Below are positions 270-42,065 of a DNA stretch of 64,000 nt, in pieces. The position numbers and the translations under genes are program-made. Under the pieces are notes generated by a model, which searched no databases, was not told the DNA's origin, and saw nothing but the letters and a program-made list of their open reading frames with translations. How positions within the stretch are numbered: position 1 is the first letter of the stretch; every line of letters starts with the position of its first letter. This DNA comes from Selaginella moellendorffii (taxonomy: Eukaryota; Plantae; Lycopodiophyta), in assembly GCF_000143415.4 (NCBI RefSeq), contig NW_003314350.1, forward strand, positions 434,001-498,000, read 5' to 3'.

Positions 270-2060
270 AGAACCCATGCCCTCAACCATCATCAAGACA
301 ATCTCTGTGACAATGGGTGAAGGAGACTTTGTTGTGCTGCAGCAAGACCTCAGTAACATCCACTGGTGGTGTATCTCACAATCGCATGGCAAACTCGCCA
401 TTTTCGTCAATATCTGCACCTCTGCAAGGCGAGACAGACTCTCGGGACTAAGATATATCCCCACACCATGGGTCCAAAACCATGCTTGATGACATCGTTT
501 CGAGAACACCCGTACCAAGCCTGCTGCAAATTTGCATCCCCGCCTCACACCTTGGTCGTGAGATCGCTGAGCATCTCAAATGCTTCTCGGCGAGCCTGAC
601 TGCCAGGACAGTCATAAAGAACTTTTTACACCAAAGTAACAGGCCACCGCCGAGAGTCACCCTAGCCCCGCTAGAAACGCTGCTTTGACGTCGACGAGTT
701 TTGGATCGCCAGCCTTGAGCTTCGCGAGCCTGCCACCGCTGGAACCCACAAGATTGGAGAGCTTGTTGCGGCTAGAAGTCACGTCTTCCACTTCACCACC
801 CTCATGGAACAAGCCCCGGCCGTGTCGATGGTAAAGCTCGAGCTTCCTTGCAGTGCACTCAAGGAAGCCTTTCCACCGCCAAGGAGCTTCTCCACATCGT
901 CGAGCAATCCAGGGCCCTCAATGGCTGGATCGGGCTAAAAAAACTCTCCAGCAACCGATTGAGTTCCTGTATCCAGTCCCGGTGTATGCACAAAGAACAC
1001 TGCCAGATGACAGCTCGCAAAGAAAGTCTCCGCGATTTCCCTGCGCAGTAGGTCTCGCACAGAGCAGCACTAATTTCCACGGGGAAATCCTTCTGAATCC
1101 CTGCTGTGTATGAAATCTGCTGGTTGCTAAGTGGACTCCTTCATGGCCCTCTAGGGACACTATCGCCTGGACTCCGGGTATGTCCACTGCAAGGCTGCTT
1201 TTGCTGCGATAGTCACCTTCGGATGCCTGTTAGTGCCCATCATATCACTGCCACCGTTGCTAAGTGTCAATCTCGACGGTGCCTCCAGAACAAGATCAAC
1301 TTGATCGGACCCGCTTGCTCCACCAAATTCTGTTCAGCCTTATCCTGAACATGCCTCATGTTCAAGCTCTTGACTGCTGAGCATCGGACTTGCATGCAAA
1401 TCCAGTCAAGATTGGAAACACTGCTTGCCTGACCCTATCACTGTTCCATGCAGCTTGCTGCCGCATATCAAAAAACCTCTACAGAGATAGAGTGCGGGGG
1501 GCTGCCAACGCAGTAGGGATCAGAAAGTGCGTGGTGGTGGACCTCTGGGGCATTGGCAATAACAGGAAACTCGGAATATTCCTTGTCCAAGAGGCTCTAG
1601 GTGACGTGATGAGCCACATTGCTAAAGTCCCTGTACCGCAATCTTTGATGATGATCTCTGGGGATAGTCGCCAAGGATCCAGCTCCTTGACAGGATCCTC
1701 TCCGTTGGCGGCACACCTGTTGGAGCAGGAATCAAGGTGTCAAGGACACAGGAATCTGCAGCAAAAATCTAGGAGAGATTAAAGGAGATGAACTAGTATA
1801 TAAGACTGTATACAACAAGCATTCAACAGTAGCTTTTCCCGTTCCATCATGGTATCAGAGACTATTCTGTTCAGCTCTATTCGGGCAGTGGGCTTGATCC
1901 AGTTCACTCGAGCAACGTAATGCAGATCATGAGAGCCATCACAGGTGAAGCTCTGCCTCAGTAGGGCTTCTTCGTATTCTTACTGCTGAATGCGATGTAG
2001 TAGATTTTGGAGGGGCAATGGAGATAATGCTGCTGAAGCCAGAATCTAGTCCCTAGGTAA
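270..2060 (+). mobile_element. Heavily degenerate transposase-like relic, possibly hAT/DUF659 type
   Basis: Broken frames give ...SHLGREIAEHLKCF...ARTVIKNFLHQS, LVQEALGDVMS and IFDDDLWG, which loosely match hAT transposase segments. Many stops and frameshifts. A partial homolog lies inverted at about 4340-4520. Confidence 0.3.
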
Positions 2061-4339
2061 GTTGATCTTTGTTGTAATGACTTTTATCCGCAAGAAAGTT
2101 CAAATTGAACAAACATTGTTTAGGTAAATTCATTTCGGCAGAAGTCAGAATTTTTTTTGAGCTGGTGAGTGTTTTTTTTTATTGTTAGTTTTGCACGGGA
2201 CAGCGATCTCAAGTTGATGTTGTCGAGAAGAACTTGAGAAGAACAAATCCTTTGAAAGCGGAGGCGCACACGCACAGAAGGTGAGAACTCTATATCACTG
2301 ATTATGAATGGGTAGATGGACATGGGTCATCTCATCACAATCAAGTGCCTGATCCACACATGGAATCTTAGCTTGAATCATGCATAGCATTGAGATGATG
2401 GAATTTGGGGAGCTGATGAGAAAAACATATAAAAATCAACTACCCCTAGGTCTTTGCTCTTTACTTTTCTATAGCCTCAATCCTGCCTCTAGCATGGGTC
2501 TTCGCTAGAAGCGGCTCAAGGAACGGCTCAGTTACTTTGCTATAGCCTCAATCTTGGTGCCTCATTGGCTTCAGTTATCTGTGAGGCAAATATAGCATTT
2601 TTGATTGGCATGATAAAACACCATTGAAGTTTATGCCATGAAAATAAGAGAAACCGAAAGAATTACGCCTACCAACACTTTTGTATCCAGCGACAGTCTT
2701 TTGGTACGTCTTGCAAAGCGGTGTCTCTTTGGTTTCTCGCCAGTCCTTGCGCGCCAGCACAAAACTAAGAAAACTTACTCAAGAATGAAAGTTAAAAAGC
2801 AAAATTCTCCGGACCTCTAAACGAGGGTGCACAAGATTGTTTCGCAATTAATCCAAACTTTGGATCCAAACCATAACCATCAGCCCACACCCAATTCTCG
2901 CAATAGCCTCGGATTGGAACACCCTGTAGATCGAGTCACAGCGAAAACTTCGAAGCTTGCCTTGTTCATGGGTAGGGGCCTACGAACCAAATCTGTGCAA
3001 TCCGAGACTTCTTGTCTTCCAGTTCCATATGCGGTCCTAGCTCGCCCGAGACACTTGTCGCTGTGCCCAAGCGATTCATCGCCTCTGCGTTCATGTTAGT
3101 GCCCCAGAAATGCTCGCAGATCATCCGTACCTCTAGTTAGGACCGCTGCCTAGCTTGAGTCGATTGCCCAGAAAATGTGTGTACCCACATTTCTCCAAGA
3201 TTTTACTAATGTTGTTTTTGTTATTTTTTATTTGCTCAAGCAAGACTTATAGAGAATATACCTAGATTGCATATTCAAGAATATTTTATTATCTATTGGT
3301 TATTATTCATTTAGATTAATTTTGTATATATAAATTATAAACATATTTATAATTTATAAACTTTCCTAAACATTTTCTAGTATATTCTTGTTTATTCTAC
3401 CATTTAGCAATAAGATTAATCTTGATTTATAAATCATAAAAATATTTATAATTCTTAATAAATTAGATTATTCAAAAATACTACTTTTAAGAAAACTAAG
3501 TACATGGCCAGCAAATTATTTAATTTAACAACTTATTGTTATTATTATACACAATACTTAAGATATTTAACTTATATTGAACATATAGCTACCATTCTGC
3601 AAAGTGCTATTGGTACCAATACCTAGTCACTGGGACATACAATAGTTAAACCATAGACTAGATGGTAGAGGGCCAAAAATGTCCTCTATTCTGGCAAAAA
3701 TATATGGAAAAATAATACATTTTAAATAAAGTTACTTTGATACATTTTACTTAAAGTTACTTTGTCAGGAAAAGGGATGCTAATGCCAGAAGCAATGTCG
3801 ACCACAACTTGGACACTTCAAGAAGTTAGTGAATGATGCGACATGAATTTTGCAAGAGTTACATGCAAAACTTATTACCATTTGCATCAAAATTAGTTCA
3901 ACTTCTATGCAAACAACTTATCACTACTGGGAGGATTTTTCTCTATACATAAATCAAATATAAGAAAGAAAGCCACATTGAAGCAGCTAAGCACATCAAA
4001 GTGTGACTGCTCCACAAAAAGAACTTGTTTGCAGAACAAGGGTCCTTGCCACAAAGATTCAAGATGAAACCCAAGCAAGTTGGATCATTGCAGCGCAAAT
4101 GAATCATACCATAGGTTTAAAGAATTGTAAAAAGCACAATTTCCTTCTGAATTAGAATAGTGTCACTGGGACCAGCAATATGTAAGAGAGTTAAATTAGA
4201 TGTACACTTGAAACTAACTCAACCTGAATATATAGAGAATATATGTCTTTGAGTATTTGCTTCACTTGCTTCAAGATCCATAACTACCGTTGTCCTTCGA
4301 TACACATAGAAGATTGACTCAGCTGTCATAGAAACAATA

Positions 4340-4520
4340 AGACTTACCACTTGAGAATGTGGTTTTGGCTTGAGGAGCATGATCTCCATTGCAACTACAC
4401 CACACTTGGCATCTTAGACACTAAGCTTGCCCCAGAGATCATCATCAAAGATTGTGGTAGCAAGAATTTTGGTGAAAAGCTTGTTGTCCATCAAGTTATA
4501 TAGAGCATCTTTAACTCCTT
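4340..4520 (-). mobile_element. Second, inverted fragment of the same transposase-like relic
   Basis: Minus strand reads VKDALYNLMDNKLFTKILATTIFDDDLWG...AMEIMLLKP followed by gtaag, matching 1634-1662 and about 2014-2060 on the plus strand. Confidence 0.4.
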
Positions 4521-4899
4521 AGGTTGTTCCAACATTTATTAAAGGTAGCCTCAGTTACCATTTCAAGGACATATGTCTTCATTTGTATTTGACCTCCCAC
4601 GATCATTAACTTTAATTTTAAATTCATGAGTACAATCCTCAACTATATGAAAATAATTTTACAACTTCTTTATTGTTTTGAAGTTTCTATTATTTTTATG
4701 ATCCAAACTATAGTTGTTTACCATAACTATATTAACCAATTTGCTAAGTCAAATATTTATATGAATTATTTCCTCAACTCTTTGAAGAAAACTTTCTACT
4801 ATTTCTAAGATCCCAAAGTCACTCCATTAATGATCCCTTTTCCCATATCATTTATAAGTTCACATATGAACTACAATATAGAGTTATGCCCTCTCAACA

Positions 4900-6000
4900 T
4901 GCAACTCCTTGAGTATAGCCCCACTCCTGGGACCATCACATGTCAACATAAAATAATGATATACCTGGCCACCAATAAAAGTCAAATTAAGGAATAACTC
5001 TAATACAAAATTATAAGTGATTAATTTTTCCATTCTACTTTAATCACTTAACCATACCTTTGATCACTTGAAAGAGTCTCATACACAACTTTCATAAGTC
5101 TTATTCCTGACTTAAGGAGTTGTTAGCCCTATAAATGTCCTTTATGCCACTCTGCCTTTGCATTTGGTTCAAATGCTCCATGTATTTAATTCCACAATAG
5201 ATACCCAAATATACCACTGATATATCAGCCTTTTACACTAAGGTTATGTCCATTCATCTTTATCATATTGGTAGCTCAAAACCACCCGACCACAATCCTA
5301 TCTCCCAAAGACTGGGTCATCCATCCATGAGTGGTCATCTGATGACCACATTTTAGCATTCTTGGGATGCCCAGAGATATAAGGAACACTTATCCTTAAT
5401 TTTCATTTTTTGGTCCCTACCAAGTCCCTCTCCATCCATTGTTGTGCTCACCAACACCATCATTGGGTCATGGCTTGAAGGCTCAACCACCAAGTCTTAT
5501 TGACCTTTATGACTTCTGTGGTATAATGCAAGCTTCATGGGTACTCTTCCAACCATATGGTAAGAGCAAGGTTTTTAAAAAAATGTTGGAGAAGGGTTCA
5601 TCTATTAAATGATATGAAGATTTCTCCATGTCGAGAATCAAGAATACTCCCCCCATCTTTTGCCTTTGGGTGCTCTAGCCAAATGGCTAGAGCAAGATTC
5701 TAATTAGCCATGCCAAGTATTCAAGTAAATAGTGCCTTCTACATTTAGATTGAGAATATCAACCATTCAATCTCCTAAGGGAGCTAGAATTGACTCTTGA
5801 ATATTTCACCAAGTTACTTCACTTGTCCATCCATGTTCACTCTAGCCTTGGAATCTTTAATAGTTATATCATCACCCATTATATGGGGTTAGCCTTTCTG
5901 AGTCACACTAGTCTTTCTTAACTAACTAATTCCAATGAAGTTTAACTCTCTCTACTATACTTTTTGAACCCCTCACTTGGGCACATTGTTAGTAAATTGC
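4900..6000 (-). mobile_element. Decayed Ty3/gypsy-like pol remnant
   Basis: Stop-ridden minus-strand fragments (KARVNMDGQVK, LGMAN*NLALAIWLEH, ILDSRHGEIFISF) resemble a retroviral-type protease region. The DNA is AT-rich with no long ORF. Confidence 0.3.
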
Positions 6001-6205
6001 TTCAAAGTCATGGTTTATGGTTAATATGCTTAATATAAGAACTTAACACATCTAATTTAAATACTTTGTCTAAGATAATTCAATTGCCATGGACACTTTT
6101 GCCTAGGAAAGGGCTACATACTCAAAAGTTGAAGAAACTTAATACTTATTGATGACCATGTTAAGGTACATGGACTAGCAAAGCCATGAGCTTGAGGGGA
6201 CATGC

Positions 6206-7143
6206 TTGCCTAATGCTCAAATTTTCATAGCTACATTCAAGAAAAGTTATAGCCTTGGAGAACGGAATAGCTCTTCTTTGGACATGAGGCTGGACTCCAA
6301 AGTGTTCATGGCAAGCTCTTTGATAGATCTGTACATGAAGTGTGGCACTATGGATGGAAAGTTTTCAGAGAGGACACCAGGGCGGGATATGGTTTTATGG
6401 ATGGCACTTCTGCTTGTCTACGTCTCAAATGGTGAAGAAGAGGGAGCTCTAGAGCTCGTCAAGTTTGTGGAGGTGGATGATGATGTGATCGGTCGACCAT
6501 TCCCTTGGGACTCAATCTCTGTGCGTGCTTGGGATCCAGAGGAAAATGGAGAGAGGCATGGCGTTCCACTTTCAAGCTTACCATGCCGGCTGGAATGACT
6601 ACGAGGTGGCTCGCGGCCTTGTGATGTACGTGAAGTGTGGGAGCATGGGGGATGCTCGCCGAGAGAGATGATGTCACAGCATGGAACTCGATGGTCTTGG
6701 GCTATGCCGAGAACAAGCAAGCAGCGCTGTGCTTGGAGCTCTTTCGAGAGATTCCTCCTCAAGTTTTGGACGCTCACAGATTGGCTGCTGCTCTCGAGGC
6801 TTGTGGAAGCCTGGCGTCTCTGGAACCGGGCAAAGCCACTCATGCTCTAGCTTGCCGCTTGGGGATGGAAGAATCTCTCATCGTTGGGACTAGTTTGGTT
6901 GACTTCTATGGCAAGTGTGGAAGCATGGTGGACGCTCGACTGGTTTTTGATGGGATCTTTCCCAAGAAGCTAGCGGCCTGGACAGCTTTCATGGAAGGCT
7001 ATGGCCGTCAAGGAAGCTCCAAGCTTGTGACGGAGCTTCTTTGTGGAATGGAAGAGGAGGGCTTTCGACCGGACGCTAAAACTCTGGCTAGCGTTATCAG
7101 CAAATGTGATTCCTTCCCAGATTATTCCTGGTGGAACCAATGA
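6206..7143 (+). pseudogene. PLS-class pentatricopeptide repeat gene fragment, frameshifted
   Basis: PPR motifs VFMASSLIDLYMKCG, MYVKCGSMGDARR, DVTAWNSMVLGYAEN, VGTSLVDFYGKCGSMVDARLVFD and GFRPDAKT are spread over different frames. No E/DYW domain is present. Confidence 0.85.
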
Positions 7144-7329
7144 ATTAAATGCCGCAGTAGACATGGTTAGCTCGATGGAAAGTGTTAGCAACGCTATGTT
7201 GGTGAGAATTATCCTAGATAGAAGGTGGAAGAATCTTCAGGTGGCATTCAAGCGTTTGATGGATTTGGATGAGTTTGATTCAGTGGGTTATGTACTATTT
7301 GCATCGAGCTATGATTAAGTGCAAATAAT

Positions 7330-8373
7330 TCACTTAGTTATTCTTTCTTCGTAAGAACGTGTCTTGCTCTGAATGGAGCGAGCGGCAAAGGTTAGAGCTC
7401 CAAGACCAATGGTGATAGCAATGGGGCCTCCGTACTCCAATGCCAAAGTCTGCCACATTCACGCAAGAATCGAGCATGGAGTAGCCAGCGAGTAGAGTGT
7501 GCTTCCGGCGATGTTGTAAAGAGCACGAACTGGGGCGAGCAGTGACTGGTATGCATATGGGAGGTATTCGCTTGCACCAAGAGCATTGAACAGAGAATCT
7601 AAGAACCATTCGCTGTGAACAGAGGCCACCACAAGAATGTCGTCCGAGAGTATCAAGGGGTTGTAGAGTCCCAGCTTGTCAACCTTTGAGATCTCTGCGT
7701 ATATCAAGATTGTGTTATTACAGAACATTAGGATGTGTGGTTTTTTGTACCTGTGATTGGTGAGGCTCCAGAGATTGTGGACAGGCTATCTCCAACTTTG
7801 AGATCAGCAGCTCGCTTGTAAATTGTCTCTCCTTTCGTATTAACTGGGACAAAATGACTGGTTGTAAGCTCCAAGGTGTTGGCTTTGGTCTTGACTTGCA
7901 CGAATTCAGAAACAACATCTAGATCCTTGTGACCAAATGCGTAGATATCCGAAAATGAGTTAATTCCAACAGCAACCTGTAGAAACTTATTAATCATATG
8001 AAGCAAAGTGGATTACTAGCTAGGATCTTGCCTTATCTCCAATCTTAAGTTCCTTCATGGTCTTCATTTCCCCACTGTACATATGAACCATTGCATCACC
8101 TAGATAGATATTGCATGTACTTAGCACGGTGTAATTTGTAAAGAATAACTTTATTACCTGGAAAGCAATCAGTGTTGTTTCTACATATTCCATTGTTACA
8201 TGTGAATTCTGCGCTGAAATATCAGCACTAGTGTTGCATTTCACTATATTAATAGCAAACACGGTGGAAAACAATCCAAGAAGAGAGATCACAGCATACA
8301 CAGCAGCTAGAGAAACTATTGCCTTTCAAGTATACTTAACGAAACACTAAGCTTATGAAGAATCATTGGCCAT
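7330..8373 (-). pseudogene. Hedgehog-type Hog (Hint autoprocessing) domain gene with signal peptide and short Cys-rich N-terminal peptide; frameshifted
   Basis: Removing introns 8100-8157 (GT-AG), 7977-8031 (GC-AG) and 7695-7750 (GT-AG) gives D-CFPGDAMVHMYSGEMKTMKELKIGDKVAVG...FSDIYAFGHK...LELTTSHFV...KRAADLKVGD...GLYNPLILSDDILVVASVHS, i.e. Hint N1, TxxH and C-terminal blocks. Frameshifts near 8220, 7500 and 7445. The start (ATG 8373 plus a weak GC-donor intron 8323-8370) is tentative. Confidence 0.85.
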
Positions 8374-8585
8374 GCACTGCTTAAATAGGATGAACTTAAA
8401 CGTAATTACATGTGATATGATTTTCTGGGGAAGAATATAAGTTACACCCTAAAAATTTATTTAAAACATAAATTATAGGTTTTTTTACTACGATAGAAAT
8501 TATTTAACTCACAACATTTAGGAGAATTTTAGTCCTCAGAGAACTAACTGGCTAGCCCTTTTAGAAGCGAAATGCTTGACGAACT

Positions 8586-11500
8586 TCACTGGTTCCCTCT
8601 ACCACCCCTGCCTCTGCCGCCCTTGTTAGTTTTCGGTGCTCGGACAACCCGGTTCCTCAGTGCTTCTGGGGACGAAGGAGACGCAGCACTCCGCTTTCTC
8701 TCCTTAGCTCTTTCCCGGGCCCTCTCGTTCAAGTTTATAGTGGTGCTTGTCACTGCTGGTGCTGGTGGTGTTCCTCCCGACAATCCTCCTGTTGGTGGTG
8801 TTGTTACTCCTCCTGTTACTGCTCCTGGGTTTGGTCTTTCAGCTTCAGCCATTCCGGCAGCCTCTCCTTGCTCGAAAGAAGTCTCGGCCGCCATCTCGGT
8901 GGAAGTCGTCTCCTGACCTGCGTCTTTGCCAAGCTCTTCCTGCTCTTTGACGTCTTCCATCTCAAACTCTCCTTCTGTTCCAGCCTCCTCCACAGTTCCA
9001 AGTGAAATCTCGCCGTCTTCCACGTCTAGACTCATCCCGTTGTCGTTCTCGTTACCCGTCGCTTCTCCTGCCTCTGTTGTCTCCTTTTGCTCCGGTTCCA
9101 CGTCCACTTGGAACTCGAACATTACAGGCGACTTCGGCTCAGAGATCTCAATGACTGGCTCGTCCGCTGTCCCGGAAGAACTTCCCTGCGCTAGCTGCAG
9201 CTCTGGCGACTTCTCCTTGAGCTTGCTGCCACTTCCATCAAAGTCATCTAGCAAAGACTCCGGACGAGAGAAACGGACCCGCCTCTGAGGAGCGGCAATG
9301 TCTGCGGCAAGATCAGCGCCCTCCAGCGACGGTAACTCCTGCTGCTCTTCATCAAGTTCCTGGAGCTTTGGTTCCTCCACTGCAGTCGTAGTAGCAGCGT
9401 CCACTTCTGGCTCTGTGGCTGGCTCGTCGTTCCTGGCCTTCTTTAAAGGTGGCAAGACTTCGTTTCTAGAGTCTTGCTGCTGTATGTTCTCGGTGTCCAA
9501 GCTCTCTGACGACGTTCTCTTGTGACCAGCAGGCACCGCAATCTCCATAGGTATTGCCACTAGTGCGTTCATGTCATTCTCCACCACCGCGTCAGGAACT
9601 CGAGCAGTCTCGCCCTCGGCCTCGGAAGTCCCTTCGCCAGCCGCGTCCAACGAGGATTCCACAGCTTCCGCTGCAGAGTCGGATTGGCTGGAAGTCTCCA
9701 TCCTAGGCCGGATTATACGCCTCCCAGAGCGACGAGTTTGGGTTTGGAATTTCTGGAACACACAAACGCAATTGAGAATGCCTTCAACTTAAAAATAACG
9801 TGTACCTCTTTCTCGATGATACTTGCACGAAGCGCTTGCATTGCCCTCAACTTATCATCCAGAATAGGTGCTGATGGCGGCCGTTGTACAGCTCTTGGGA
9901 ACGGAACCGACGGCCTCACTATGCTTAGATGCATGGGGACTGGAGGAGGAGTCGGAGTCGGAGTTGGAGCCGGAGCCGGAGCCGGAGCCGGAGCTGGAGC
10001 CGAAGCCGGAGCTAGCACAGCCGGAGGAGGCACGTTGGCAACTGGTGGTGTTGTAGAAGTTTCGTGCTCAGGGGCTGCGACAACTGGTGCTGGAGTAAGC
10101 TCGGCAGCCATATCATTCAGTTGTTCAACTGTCGCAGAAAAAGTTTTAGAGCTCGCCTCCGCGTTTATGATGGTGGTGCTAGTCTCAGCTCCTTGGATTT
10201 GCTGCAACTGTATCACGGCATTCACGAGACCTGGATAAGTAAGAAAAATTACCTGTCGTAGTTGCTCGTTTTCTTGTTTCACTGCCTGCAGGTCTTCGAG
10301 AAATCGTTGTTTTTCCTGAAAACCACTATGAGCGTTCAGCTGTGGAGAAGAGCAGCTTACCGTGGTTGCTTTTTGCAGCAGCTCCATCAAAGCCGTCCTG
10401 TCTTTATCGATTTTAGATTTCGATTTATCCCTTTCTTTCTCCAAGGTTTTCTCGAGCGTCTAGACAAGAAAAATGTTAAAACACAACAGTAGGAAAAGGA
10501 AAGTAACCCACTTGAATTCTTGAGTCTTTCTCGATCGCCTCTCGTTGAGCTAGCTCGTAACGTGCAACGTTTTCTCTTTGAGCTTGTTCTAACCGCAATG
10601 CAGACTCCTTTTGGCATGCCTCGAGCGCTTCTTGATGCACCGGCAACTTGCCGGACTTGAGTTCTTCAATTTCTTTTTGCATCACTTCTCTGTCCTTCTC
10701 ATATTTCCGCTGTTTCATCAAGACTTGGGTCAAAGAAATCAGGCAAGGTGAGCCTCACCTTCGTTTGGGTCAAGATCTTCCTGTTTCTCTCGACTTCGGC
10801 TCTCAGAGACGCCTGAAGAAACATATCAGTTAACGCCAACCACATGACTTTCAAATCACTCACCTCTAATTTTACAGCATCTTGAAACCTTCGCTCTAAT
10901 TCTGCTTGAGTCTCGGTTCTTAGAGCAAGCTCCTGTTCATACTTTGCGATGGTTTCGCGCCACATCGACGTCTCTGAGCCAATTCGTTCCTGCTTTTGAC
11001 CATGTAAAGCCTGTTTGATGTAAAGTACGAAGTTATACCTGTGTCTGTACCAGCAAAGCCTTCACTCTTTCATAATCATCGACATCTAGAGACTTGTACT
11101 TCTCCAACATCTGTACCCCCACATCAATCGTAGTTTAAAAAACCGCAAGTACTAACCTGAGTACATCTTTGTTCCCAGCGACGAGTTTCGGCTTTTGAGA
11201 CTTCCACTTCTTGTGCACGGGCGTGAAGTTCGAGTTGCAATTCCGTTACAGTTCTTTTAAGGGATTCATTCTCCTCTTCAAGTTTTTGAAACCTCCCTTG
11301 CAATTCCTGAAAATACAGAAGTAAAAAAGGAGCCTGCAACATTGATAGCTTTACCTTATTCTCATCAAGGACTCTCTTAATTTCCTCCTGAAGCTGCCCA
11401 TTGTTGCCGCGCAAGATATTCGTCTCCATAACCTGTGAACTAAAGTTTAGTGTAGCAAGCGTAGCTTGAGCCAATACCTGTGCCTGAAGCGCCCGAAATT

Positions 11501-39471: not shown

Positions 39472-40023
39472 ATGGGGTCTGAGGTGAATCCAAAGGCGTA
39501 CCCTCTGGCGGATGCGCAGCTCACCAATACTATCCTGGAAGTCGTCAATCAGGCAGCGAACTACCGGCAGCTCAAGAAGGGCGCGAATGAGGGTAAGATT
39601 TCTTCGCGAGCGTTTCTTTTGGTCTCAAACTCGATTCTTGCAGCGACCAAGACGCTGAATCGCGGCATGGCGGAGTTTATAATCATGGCCGCGGACACGG
39701 AGCCGCTGGAAATCCTCTTGCATTTGCCCCTTTTGGCCGAAGACAAGGTGAGAGTTTAGCGCTTTGCTTTTTCCTTTCGATTCTCACTTCTCTTTCGATG
39801 GGTGTAGAATGTTCCCTATGTGTTCGTACCGTCGAAGCAAGCGCTGGGGCGAGCTTGCGGCGTTTCGAGGTCCGTGATTGCAGCCTCGGTGACGTCCAAC
39901 GAAGGCAGCCAGCTCAAGAGCCAGATCGAGCAGCTCAAGGCAAGTTTCTAGATCTCTTGGATGTTTCTTTCAGTTCTCATGGGATTTTTCTTGCAGGGAC
40001 TGATCGAGAAGCTGCTGATCTGA
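39472..40023 (+). CDS. SNU13: Snu13/15.5K/NHP2-like protein 1 (L7Ae family)
   Basis: [13 protein letters not shown]...[16 protein letters not shown]...[37 protein letters not shown]...IEKLLI. Three introns, the last GC-AG. Confidence 0.97.
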
Positions 40024-40152
40024 TGACTATAGCGAAGAGAAGAAGAGAAGGAATCTAGTTTTTCTTGGATACTGATGAGATGGTCAAGGGACAAGGATGG
40101 TGGTACCGTGTGACTTGTCTATCATTGAAGTTCCAGGCAATGTTAATATTTC

Positions 40153-40319
40153 TTCAAATCTAAAAGTCATGGAGTGCATTTTAATTTTCTACCTTACGAC
40201 ATTATTGTGAAAACATGCTTTACTAGAACGATGTTTTTTCCTTTTTCTCCTTAGGAGCTTCGTTTTACAAAGATTTGAGACTAATGTTTGCTCTTCATTT
40301 ATTGTCCACTTTTGCTGAT
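40153..40319 (+). repeat. Imperfect direct repeat, copy 1 (copy 2 at 44236-44383)
   Basis: Shared blocks ttcaaat.taaaagtcatggagtgcatttt, ttaggagc and aatgttt...cttcatttat...tcca.ttttgctgat. Confidence 0.8.
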
Positions 40320-41196
40320 TGTTCAGGGCACCTTCAAAACTAGCGTGATTTGTGGTGAGCATGAGATTGTCTTGTCTGGGATCTTGTGGACCTTATCACT
40401 CTAGATGAGCAATATTTGCTCTTTTACTGCTGCAGATTCTTCCTCAAGTTCCCACTCTAATTCCATGGTGAAATCACTCTCCTTATCTACTGTTGTCCTT
40501 AGTTTGTTGCTCCAGCTCCATGGTAACATCATTTTGCTCCTCGCCCAAATTGGATTGAGTGCCCTGGATCAGCATGTGGTGGAGTGCCGAGCAATCACAG
40601 ACGTGTGGGCAAAGTAGGTGCTGCTGTTGCAAGAAGGCCATGAGCTCCTCCACGCTCCCAAATGTAACAAAAGGCTGCTGTGATGCACTGGGTAGTTTTT
40701 GAGGTGGTGGATGTACTTGATTAGCATGCATTTATCTCTTCTTACTACCAGATAGATGAAAATAATTTATTAAGGGCGATGAGAATGTACCACAACCCTT
40801 GGATTAGATTTATATTTAAAAGTGCTATGTATGGTTGCTTATATCTGAAGGTTTCATATTTGTCTCATCAAATCAAAGATCCTTTTATGGTCGTTGGTTG
40901 AGGAAAGCTTAAAGGTATTTTACTCCTTTGTTTTGTTGATTTAAATCTTATACTTATAACAAAATAACATAAGTAATTATGTTGTAATATTAAAACTATT
41001 CAAGCTTAGCAATAGTTTGAGAGAATCAAATATATATAAAAAATACCTTTTGTATTTTTTTTATTTTCCATATGAAATTTTTTTATATTAGAATAAAAAT
41101 AATGGAATAAAAAGCTAATACATTGAGATCGTCTATAAATAATAAGTCCTATCCAATAGTTTATTAATTTAATTTAAAATTAAATTTAAAATTTTT

Positions 41197-42065
41197 ATGT
41201 TTGTGTATAAGTTTATACTTTTTTATTTATTTTTTAAAAATGTATTTTCAATCACCTATGAATGGGGAGATAATGGACCAGGGAAAAACTTAGAGGAGCA
41301 AGATATTAATAATATTATAAATGGATTCATAGACTTATAAGAGATATTGATTATTATAGATATTATTCTACAACATATCAAGATTTAACTCTAATAGAAA
41401 CTTCACGAGGAATTATTTGTGCTAGGATAAAACGATTTGAGCATCAATCGAATACTTGTGGAACAGGTAAGGTAACTAATACAGTGATTAAAGGAATAAA
41501 CTTGATGCAACGCTTAAACCCATTAGTTCAAAATAATCATGAAGCAATGGTTTTAAATCGTGCAAGCTCAGCTAAAATCACATCAATAAATTATCAAATA
41601 CAATATTCTATGGCAGTATGGTGGTCACAACCACTATATATATATAATATAAGAAGTCAAAATTCAAAAGACTGTGATATTGCAAGTAATACACTTGAAA
41701 GTGGTAGTCAACTTTTATACAAGGGAGATTTCTTAATATCTCCAAATGGAAAGAATATTTTATTATTAGAATCTAAATGCAATTTAGTATTATATTCAGA
41801 AAGAAATAAAATTTGGGATACTCCAATAAATATTAATTATAATAATTGTTATCTAAAAGTTCAAAATGATGGTAACCTTGTCATATATTCATATAAAAAA
41901 GAGGTTATATGGGCAAATAATTTTTATTGCCGTTATCAACCAAATTGCCTATTATTTACATATTATACTTTGCAAAATGATTGTAATTTTATTGCTTATA
42001 AAGTTGAATCACCAAACAATATTTGGTGGTCTTCAAAAACAGCAAATCACAAATTATGTAAGTAA
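41197..42065 (+). pseudogene. Secreted protein with unknown N-terminal domain fused to a bulb-type (GNA) mannose-binding lectin domain; one apparent frameshift
   Basis: ATG 41197 gives a signal peptide MFVYKFILFYLFFKNVFS and stops at 41338-41340. A frame shift near 41335 continues to LISPNG...CNLVLY...QNDGNLVIY...QNDCNFIAY...WSSKT (QxDxNxVxY lectin motifs). Intronless and very AT-rich. Confidence 0.75.

What the first reader, a model, noticed from the sequence alone, without database searches (positions are those of the whole stretch)
7330..8373. Hedgehog-type Hint (Hog) autoprocessing gene in a land plant, hidden by an intron through its catalytic motif
Seen: the ORF track misses the catalytic Cys. 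Splicing out the 58-nt GT-AG intron 8100-8157 joins TGC TTT CCA G to GT GAT GCA, giving D-CFPGDA. Two further introns restore KTMKELKIGDKV, FSDIYAFGHK, LELTTSH (TxxH block B), AADLKVGD and GLYNPL..S..I.V.ASVHS. Established: this is the Hint module of Hedgehog and Hog proteins, which cleaves before Cys1 by an N-S acyl shift. In Hedgehog it transfers the N-terminal part onto cholesterol. Hog genes are absent from flowering plants as far as I know, although I recall sporadic reports from algae and non-seed plants, so the domain alone may not be new. Inference: this lineage has a secreted self-cleaving precursor system whose function is uncharacterised.
Basis: partly seen in the sequence, partly recalled or inferred. 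Interest (0 to 1): 0.85.

Follow-up and report, generated by a model that had tools for sequence, protein, structure and literature searches.

The report
Decayed spikemoss Hedgehog-like (Hog) gene copy
This stretch is a broken, silent extra copy of a Hedgehog-type self-cleaving (Hog) gene of the spikemoss Selaginella moellendorffii; the gene family was published in 2008 and is already annotated, so the finding is real but ordinary.

Summary
On the minus strand, three short introns (8157-8100, 8031-7977, 7750-7695) join exons that encode D-CFPGDA, KTMKELKIGDKV, FSDIYAFGHK, LELTTSH and GLYNPL...VASVHS. This is a Hedgehog-type Hint/Hog module. An intact sister gene, spliced at the homologous sites, reproduces its RefSeq protein exactly.

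The window is Selaginella moellendorffii. The locus is already annotated (SELMODRAFT_427238, "Hedgehog protein Hint domain-containing protein"). Hog genes of this species were published by Bürglin in 2008, and RefSeq lists many paralogs ("warthog protein 4/6"). This scan has also followed up the same family at other places in this genome.

This copy is a pseudogene. Compared with three intact sisters:
- the start codon is ATA;
- a 10-nt deletion shifts the frame in the cargo peptide;
- 9 nt are missing from a conserved Hint motif;
- a 1-nt deletion leads to a TGA at 7461-7459;
- the sisters' stop codon is lost.

The ATG at 8373 is a conserved upstream mini-ORF, not the start. The second haplotype shares two of the changes and has its own splice-site and frameshift lesions. 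The few RNA reads over the stretch come from a sister gene, in antisense orientation. The neighbouring PPR gene is also a broken fragment. Interest is low.

The parts
8356..8373 (-). Upstream mini-ORF (ATG GCC AAT GAT TCT TCA, stop TAA at 8355-8353). It lies in the 5' leader and is conserved in the sister genes. It is not the start of the Hog protein.
   Evidence: Alignments A1 and A2: the same ATG and short ORF lie upstream of the true ATG in L001 copies A and B.
8317..8319 (-). Former start codon, now ATA (the sisters have ATG).
   Evidence: M>I at 8317. The other haplotype, L003, still has ATG.
8158..8316 (-). Remnant of exon 1: signal-peptide frame (SLAAVYAVISLLGLFSTVFAINIVKC...), then a 10-nt deletion near 8213/8212 that shifts the frame, then ...AEFTCNNGICRNNTD-CFP(G). 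The Cys1 codon is TGC at 8167-8165. The residue before it is Asp (GAT, 8170-8168) where the sisters have Gly.
8100..8157 (-). Intron 1, 58 nt, GT..AG, splitting the Gly codon of CFPG. It is 60 nt long in the sisters.
8032..8099 (-). Exon 2: (G)DAMVHMYSGEMKTMKELKIGDK, Hint block A.
   Evidence: Pfam Hint, 18.1 bits, profile positions 14-39.
7977..8031 (-). Intron 2, 55 nt, GC..AG (GCAAGA donor), conserved in all copies.
7751..7976 (-). Exon 3: VAVGINSFSDIYAFGHKD...LELTTSHFVP...AADLKVGD...SPIT. Block B TxxH is kept as TTSH (the sisters have TAGH). A His sits at the position of the Hedgehog general-base Asp.
7695..7750 (-). Intron 3, 56 nt, GT..AG.
   Evidence: The contig in X2 joins 7694 to 7751.
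7459..7694 (-). Exon 4 up to the premature stop: (E)ISKVDKLGLYNPLILSDDILV--VASVHSEWFLD... A 9-nt deletion (the sisters' VNN) lies at about 7633-7630, with T>I at 7652 and G>D at 7643. A 1-nt deletion at 7489 shifts the frame and leads to TGA at 7461-7459.
7330..7458 (-). Remnant of the C-terminal hydrophobic anchor (EYGGPIAITIGLGALTFAARSI). An extra base near 7440 brings it back into frame. The sisters' stop TAG is CAG here (7371-7369), so the frame runs on to TGA at 7332-7330.
6190..7318 (+). Convergent PPR gene fragment belonging to the same duplicated block. Only residues of about 408-848 of the sister locus's 848-aa PPR protein remain, spread over three frame segments.

Best explanation
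The stretch is an unprocessed (duplicated) pseudogene of the Selaginella moellendorffii Hog family. A block of about 2.25 kb (window about 8438-6190) was copied from the Hog-PPR array now on scaffold GL377597.1. It carried one Hog gene and the 3' half of the convergent PPR gene, and it landed just downstream of a nuclear-pore TPR-like gene. The copy kept its three introns and most of the Hint sequence but has since decayed. It has lost the start codon, the frame in the cargo peptide, three residues of a conserved C-terminal Hint strand, the frame before the membrane anchor and the original stop codon. It therefore cannot make the precursor that its sisters encode: signal peptide, four-Cys cargo of about 30 residues, Gly-Cys cleavage site, Hint/Hog domain and C-terminal hydrophobic anchor. 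For the intact sisters the likely mechanism is the Hedgehog one. This is inferred from homology and was not tested. An N-to-S acyl shift at Gly|Cys-Phe-Pro-Gly would be aided by the TxxH block. The thioester would then be resolved by water or a lipid or sterol nucleophile, releasing the small Cys-rich peptide. A His stands where Hedgehog has its general-base Asp.
For: Identity: the exon 3 search returns P0001, the 165-aa public model of this very locus, at 100% identity. Its sources name it SELMODRAFT_427238 / XP_002988603.1, S. moellendorffii, 'Hedgehog protein Hint domain-containing protein'. Family membership: intact sisters hit Pfam Hint strongly (P0091 93.3 bits, E = 2e-26; P0005 94.9 bits; P0002 94.3 bits), and P0091 aligns to Drosophila and human Hedgehog C-domains in the PDB. 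Gene structure: L001 copy B, spliced at the homologous junctions, equals P0091 exactly, and copy A gives an intact 266-aa ORF. Lesions seen only against intact sisters (alignments A1 and A2): ATG>ATA at 8319-8317; a 10-nt deletion near 8213; a 9-nt deletion near 7631; a 1-nt deletion at 7489 followed by TGA at 7461-7459; an extra base near 7440; TAG>CAG at 7371-7369. No in-frame ATG precedes the Cys exon. Neutral decay: window-specific substitutions are as frequent in exons (47 of 775, 6.1%) as in introns (9 of 169, 5.3%). Second haplotype: L003 (GL377605.1) is 99.2% identical in the flanking gene but only 93-97% identical, with many indels, across the Hog stretch. It shares the 9-nt deletion and the Gly>Asp change and adds its own lesions: the intron 1 acceptor AG is now TG, 12 nt of the exon 2 start are lost, and a 7-nt deletion shifts the frame. 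Expression: two stranded RNA runs sampled at about 12% each give depth of about 100 on the neighbouring gene. Reads reach the Hog stretch only at 7385-7840 (depth up to about 10), apart from a single-read trace at 7955-8125. The 7442-7612 reads carry exactly the differences of sister gene P0105 (7498, 7568, 7577, 7582, 7587, and the extra base at 7488/9), and the 7670-7840 reads carry the sisters' intron 3 differences. All are oriented opposite to the neighbouring minus-strand gene, so they are antisense to Hog. Neighbour: the PPR gene next door is 5'-truncated and frameshifted.
Against: The catalytic Cys, the TxxH block and all six splice-site dinucleotides are still present. The window-lineage ratio of nonsynonymous to synonymous changes (28:19) is no higher than that between the intact sisters A and B (12:8), so substitution patterns alone do not prove loss of constraint. 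RNA was sampled in only two raw-read runs from one study, at about 12% each, so expression that is tissue-specific or very low is not excluded. RefSeq still carries a protein model for the locus (P0001).
Confidence: 0.9

Rival explanations
1. It is a functional Hog gene: a secreted precursor that cleaves itself before Cys1.
For: The Cys1-Phe-Pro-Gly motif, the TxxH block and the three introns are intact. The Hint HMM hits are collinear across the exons.
Against: No start codon exists for the signal peptide: 8319-8317 reads ATA, and the ATG at 8373 is followed by three stops within 18 codons. There is a frameshift between the signal peptide and the Cys exon. There is an in-frame TGA at 7461-7459. 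Three residues of a conserved Hint strand are deleted. No reads belong to this copy itself. The allele on the other haplotype is broken independently.
Confidence: 0.03
2. The locus makes the annotated 165-aa protein (P0001: MEYVETTLIAFQ joined to exons 3 and 4), a Hint fragment without the catalytic Cys that has taken on some other role.
For: RefSeq and UniProt carry this model. It scores 28.3 bits on Pfam Hint.
Against: The model starts in the wrong frame of exon 1 and skips exon 2. It lacks a signal peptide and the first Hint strands, falls below Pfam's cut-off of 29.7 bits, and ends at the frameshift-induced TGA. No sense reads were found. The other haplotype cannot encode the same product.
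Confidence: 0.05
3. The lesions are assembly or sequencing errors in an otherwise intact gene.
For: Single-base indels such as the one at 7489 are a common kind of error.
Against: There are at least six separate lesions, including 9-nt and 10-nt deletions and two point changes in the start and stop codons. The public protein model P0001 carries the same frameshifted tail. The independently assembled second haplotype shares the 9-nt deletion and the Gly>Asp change. The reads that 'correct' position 7489 carry five further differences that identify them as sister gene P0105.
Confidence: 0.02

Closest known systems
Selaginella moellendorffii Hog genes ('warthog protein 6', XP_024537580.1 = P0091; XP_024537579.1 = P0105; L001 copy A), a tandem array on GL377597.1
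   Same: DNA is 86-91% identical over about 1.1 kb, including the 5' leader with its mini-ORF. The three introns are at the same positions, including the GC-AG one. The order is the same: signal peptide, Cys-rich cargo, CFPG, Hint, hydrophobic tail. A convergent PPR gene lies downstream.
   Different: The sisters are intact at 265-266 aa, whereas this copy has lost start, frame and stop. The sisters have Gly before Cys1, TAGH rather than TTSH, and the full PLTLSGxILVNNVVASVHS strand.
Plant and algal Hog proteins described by Bürglin 2008 (BMC Genomics 9:127; PMC2362128): pSm, pSl and pPp Hog
   Same: Same species and same domain family. That paper reports Hog domains in S. moellendorffii, S. 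lepidophylla and Physcomitrella, with motifs J and K present and the motif J cysteine replaced, and notes their absence from Arabidopsis and other higher plants.
   Different: The paper reported one sequence per species. This locus is a further, degenerate copy that the paper does not discuss.
Animal Hedgehog C-terminal autoprocessing domain (Drosophila Hh-C, PDB 1AT0 and 6TYY; human SHH, 7E2I)
   Same: Shared features are CFPG at the cleavage site, the TxxH block and the PLTxxGxIxVNxVxAS strand. Sister P0091 aligns over residues 54-184 to the whole 145-residue Hh-C17 chain.
   Different: There is no Hedge signalling domain, and the cargo is only about 30 residues. A His replaces the general-base Asp, and the alignment scores best against 6TYY, whose chain carries His at that position. 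The motif J Cys is replaced. A C-terminal hydrophobic anchor follows the domain. Sterol transfer has not been tested.
Nematode Hh-related proteins (warthog, groundhog, quahog)
   Same: Both have a Hog domain joined to a non-Hedge secreted N-terminal part and form large, fast-evolving gene families that include pseudogenes (Bürglin 2008).
   Different: RefSeq's name 'warthog' is only a best-hit label. No Wart domain is present (Pfam finds only Hint).

Membership tests
Hint/Hog domain family (Pfam PF01079) | Significant sequence similarity to the Hint module | tested here: met
Exon ORFs score 18.1 and 19.4 bits, collinear, each below the 29.7-bit cut-off on its own. The locus's public model P0001 scores 28.3 bits. 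tblastn with intact sister P0091 (itself 93.3 bits on Hint) covers all exons at E = 1e-97. Homology is secure.
Hint/Hog domain family (Pfam PF01079) | Nucleophilic Cys1 in a (G)CFPG block A | tested here: met
   TGC at 8167-8165 is followed by TTT CCA G|GT across intron 1. The residue before Cys1 is Asp instead of the sisters' Gly.
Hint/Hog domain family (Pfam PF01079) | Block B Thr-x-x-His | tested here: met
   LELTTSHF in exon 3 aligns with TAGH of the sisters and TPAH of Drosophila Hh-C.
Hint/Hog domain family (Pfam PF01079) | Intact C-terminal Hint strands (PLTxxGxIxVNxVxAS, motifs F and J) | tested here: not met
   The window reads PLILSDDILV--VASVHS. Nine nt (VNN) are deleted, with T>I and G>D changes.
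Hint/Hog domain family (Pfam PF01079) | General-base Asp (Asp303 / D46 of Drosophila Hh-C), used for sterol transfer | tested here: not met
   The whole Selaginella family has His here (AFGHKD), aligned to the His of PDB 6TYY and the Asp position of 1AT0. From my own memory and not checked here: 6TYY is a D46H variant that keeps its activity.
Functional Hog precursor gene | Continuous ORF from a start codon through the signal peptide, cargo and Hog domain | tested here: not met
   The start codon position reads ATA. A 10-nt deletion causes a frameshift. A 1-nt deletion leads to TGA at 7461-7459.
Functional Hog precursor gene | Self-cleavage at Gly|Cys | not testable with these tools
   This needs expression of an intact sister with a Cys1Ala control.
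Duplicated (unprocessed) pseudogene | Disabling mutations relative to intact paralogs, with introns retained | tested here: met
   Alignments A1 and A2. All three introns are present.
Duplicated (unprocessed) pseudogene | Evolution without constraint | tested here: inconclusive
   Window-specific change is 6.1% in exons and 5.3% in introns. The two haplotypes carry independent lesions, and the stretch is 3-7% diverged between them against 0.8% in the flank. However, the nonsynonymous-to-synonymous ratio of 28:19 is no higher than between the intact sisters.
Duplicated (unprocessed) pseudogene | No transcripts of its own | tested here: met
   In two RNA runs the reads at 7385-7840 carry the sisters' diagnostic bases (those of P0105 at 7442-7612) and are antisense. 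About one read at 7955-8125 was not assigned to a copy. Sampling was limited: one study, about 12% of each run.

The most novel reading that the evidence does not exclude
The locus itself offers nothing new. The most novel reading still open concerns its intact sisters. They may release a four-Cys peptide of about 30 residues whose C-terminal Gly is esterified to a sterol or another lipid by a Hog domain that is itself membrane-anchored and uses His as general base. That would be a Hedgehog-style lipid-tagged peptide signal in a vascular plant. This decayed copy would then simply record recent turnover in that family.
Probability: 0.15. Interest if true: 0.6.

Novelty: already known. Interest (0 to 1): 0.08.

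Why it matters
It matters little. The result corrects a public gene model: SELMODRAFT_427238 / XP_002988603.1 is better treated as a pseudogene than as a 165-aa protein. It also shows that the spikemoss Hog family is still gaining and losing copies, with different lesions on the two haplotypes of one locus. The real open question is what plant Hog precursors do and whether they attach a lipid. That question belongs to the intact sister genes and has stood since 2008. I found no functional study in the searched library.

Tried and rejected
- **Start at 8373.** I tried reading the ATG at 8373 as the start. Three stops follow within 18 codons, and no GT..AG intron of plausible length removes them. 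The sister alignment shows it is a conserved upstream mini-ORF.
- **Introns to bridge the two frame breaks.** The candidates are only 13-31 nt long or give stops, against the 55-60 nt of the real introns. The sisters show simple indels at these places.
- **The 'extra C at 7488' reads as an intact allele of this locus.** Rejected. The reads carry all five other P0105-specific bases. The true second haplotype (L003) is broken in other ways.
- **dN/dS on the window lineage.** Uninformative.
- **Further Hog copies in the 64-kb window.** tblastn found none.
- **Literature search for functional work on plant Hog proteins.** Nothing beyond Bürglin 2008 and reviews.
- **Steps not run.** The window's exons were searched one by one, by reference. 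In scripts, only the intact public sister genes were spliced and translated, to compare them with their own RefSeq protein. No structure prediction or complex prediction was run, because Pfam and PDB sequence matches already settle the fold.

Full report
**What is in the sequence.**
The feature lies on the minus strand.
- Reading 5' to 3', TGC TTT CCA G (8167-8158) is followed by a 58-nt GT..AG intron (8157-8100).
- Exon 2 (8099-8032) encodes (G)DAMVHMYSGEMKTMKELKIGDK.
- A 55-nt intron (8031-7977) follows. Its donor is GC (GCAAGA), not GT.
- Exon 3 (7976-7751) encodes VAVGINSFSDIYAFGHKDLDVVSEFVQVKTKANTLELTTSHFVPVNTKGETIYKRAADLKVGDSLSTISGASPIT.
- A 56-nt GT..AG intron (7750-7695) follows.
- Exon 4 starts at 7694 and encodes (E)ISKVDKLGLYNPLILSDDILVVASVHSEWFLD....

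**Is it a Hint/Hog module?**
Scanned exon by exon, the ORFs holding exons 2 and 3 hit Pfam Hint (PF01079). They score 18.1 and 19.4 bits at consecutive profile positions, 14-39 and 50-92. A search of 1.84 billion representative proteins with exon 3 found 90 hits. The best, P0001, is 100% identical. The next hits (54-64% identity) include full-length proteins of 275-279 aa with a signal peptide, CFPGDA, the same Hint blocks and a hydrophobic C-terminus. These intact relatives score 93-95 bits on Pfam Hint. P0091 aligns end to end with Drosophila Hedgehog C-domain chains 1AT0 and 6TYY and with human SHH. The domain assignment is therefore secure.

**Whose gene is it, and is it known?**
- P0001 is SELMODRAFT_427238 / XP_002988603.1 of Selaginella moellendorffii. 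UniProt names it 'Hedgehog protein Hint domain-containing protein'.
- It is the existing model of this very locus. It begins at an internal ATG in the wrong frame (MEYVETTLIAFQ), skips exon 2 and so lacks the catalytic Cys.
- About twenty further S. moellendorffii Hint proteins on at least nine scaffolds were returned, many named 'warthog protein 4/6' by RefSeq.
- Bürglin 2008 (PMC2362128) reported Hog domains in S. moellendorffii, S. lepidophylla and Physcomitrella patens, with motifs J and K present and the motif J Cys replaced. The paper noted their absence from Arabidopsis and other higher plants.
- Earlier follow-ups of this scan reached the same view for other Hog loci of this genome. 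One of them covers three intact four-Cys-cargo genes, which probably correspond to the sister array used here.

**Comparison with intact sisters.**
The closest relatives lie in a tandem array on scaffold GL377597.1: copy A (L001:1155-1990), copy B = P0091 (L001:3001-3969) and P0105 (L004:3501-4469). Copy B and P0105 are each followed by a convergent PPR gene or gene fragment. The window aligns to copy A at 91% and to copy B plus its PPR neighbour at 86% over 2.4 kb. Copy B, spliced at the homologous junctions, gives P0091 exactly, and copy A gives an intact 266-aa ORF.

Against these sisters the window copy carries the following lesions:
- the start codon is ATA (8319-8317);
- a 10-nt deletion near 8213/8212 shifts the frame between the signal peptide and the Cys exon, and the second cargo cysteine just upstream (8221-8219) is also replaced;
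- Gly before Cys1 is Asp (8170-8168);
- TAGH has become TTSH;
- 9 nt (VNN) are missing at about 7633-7630 from the conserved strand PLTLSGxILVNNVVASVHS, with T>I (7652) and G>D (7643) beside the gap;
- one G is missing at 7489, which leads to TGA at 7461-7459;
- an extra base near 7440 brings the hydrophobic tail back into frame;
- the sisters' stop TAG is CAG (7371-7369).

It is conserved upstream of the true ATG in the sisters.

**Second haplotype.**
L003 (GL377605.1) is collinear with window 12365-5638. It is 99.2% identical in the upstream gene. It carries exactly the alternative bases seen in about half of the RNA reads on that gene (8561, 8568, 8663). It is therefore the other haplotype of the same locus. 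Its Hog copy shares the 9-nt deletion and the Gly>Asp change and still has the ATG. It also has lesions of its own:
- the intron 1 acceptor AG is now TG;
- 12 nt are missing from the start of exon 2;
- 9 nt are deleted before the Cys;
- a 7-nt deletion shifts the frame.

Across the Hog stretch the haplotypes are only 93-97% identical and differ by many indels. The locus was therefore already free to decay before the haplotypes diverged, or has been since.

**Rates of change.**
Window-specific substitutions are as frequent in exons (6.1%) as in introns (5.3%). The nonsynonymous-to-synonymous count (28:19) is not informative, because the intact sisters show the same ratio.

**Expression.**
- Two stranded RNA-seq runs of the same species were each read to about 12%. 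They cover the upstream gene at depth of about 100.
- On the Hog stretch, reads lie only at 7385-7840 (depth up to about 10), plus a single-read trace at 7955-8125.
- Those at 7442-7612 carry 7498 T>C, 7568 T>C, 7577 C>T, 7582 A>G, 7587 T>C and an extra base at 7488/9, and their clipped ends spell the intact TLSGNILVNN strand. These are exactly the differences between the window and sister gene P0105.
- The reads at 7670-7840 run unspliced through intron 3 and carry the sisters' intron differences.
- All of them are oriented opposite to the neighbouring minus-strand gene, so they are antisense to Hog. I infer that they are the 3' end of the convergent PPR transcript at the sister locus.
- One 57-nt contig in run X2 joins 7694 to 7751. 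That confirms the junction for the family, but the 57 bases are identical in all copies.
- No read can be assigned to this locus.

**Surroundings.**
The PPR sequence at 6190-7318 (+) keeps only residues of about 408-848 of the sister's 848-aa protein, in three frame segments. The whole duplicated block of about 2.25 kb is therefore degenerate. The window holds no other Hog copy.

**Mechanism.**
For this locus: none, because it is a dead copy. For the intact sisters, the mechanism below is inferred from homology to Hedgehog and inteins and was not tested.
- The signal peptide directs the precursor into the secretory pathway.
- Cys1 attacks the preceding Gly carbonyl (N-to-S acyl shift), helped by the TxxH block.
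- The thioester is resolved by water or a lipid nucleophile, freeing a four-Cys peptide of about 30 residues.

The general-base Asp of Hedgehog is His throughout the family. P0091 aligns better to PDB 6TYY, whose chain has His there, than to wild-type 1AT0. The hydrophobic C-terminal tail would keep the Hog domain on a membrane.

**Verdict.**

Noticed in passing
window 8586-9761 (-), extending upstream to at least 12365: This is the last exon of a nuclear-pore TPR/NUA-like gene. The allele on L003 is called as a 2057-aa product with Nucleoprot-TPR and TPR_MLP1_2 domains. It is well expressed, and both haplotypes are represented at about 1:1 in the RNA reads (SNPs at 8561, 8568 and 8663). Its 3' end fades out at about 8470-8520, only about 150 nt from the Hog remnant's former start.
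   Followed up: partly
window 6190-7318 (+): This is a PPR pseudogene fragment: the 3' half of an 848-aa PPR gene, with frameshifts. It was copied together with the Hog gene from the array on GL377597.1.
   Followed up: yes
window 7977-8031 (-); L001, L003, L004 homologous sites: Intron 2 uses a GC-AG splice pair (AAG|GCAAGA). It is conserved in every Hog copy compared and is used in the RefSeq model of the sister gene.
   Followed up: yes
window 8353-8373 (-); L001 copies A and B: A short upstream ORF (MANDSS-stop) lies about 50 nt before the true start codon. It is conserved in the 5' leaders of the sister Hog genes and could be a translational control element.
   Followed up: no
P0091 residues 4-50 (sister gene, L001:3001-3969): The signal peptide plus four-Cys cargo gives a weak, sub-threshold Pfam hit to Late nodulin (PF07127; E = 0.0019, 18.9 bits against a cut-off of 30.4). 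This probably reflects only the generic shape of small secreted Cys-rich peptides.
   Followed up: no
P0091 residue H in AFGHKD, equivalent to window 7934-7932 (-): All Selaginella Hog proteins seen have His where Drosophila Hedgehog has the general-base Asp. The PDB chain 6TYY, a Hedgehog C-domain with His at that position, is their best Drosophila structural match by sequence.
   Followed up: partly
L004:4519-5070 (-) and window 7385-7840: Antisense RNA reads run over the 3' part of sister gene P0105. They probably come from the convergent PPR gene fragment's transcript running into the Hog gene.
   Followed up: partly
window 2001-6000 and 40001-42000: These are AT-rich stretches (GC 0.31-0.37) set in sequence of about 45-50% GC. 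I did not examine them.
   Followed up: no
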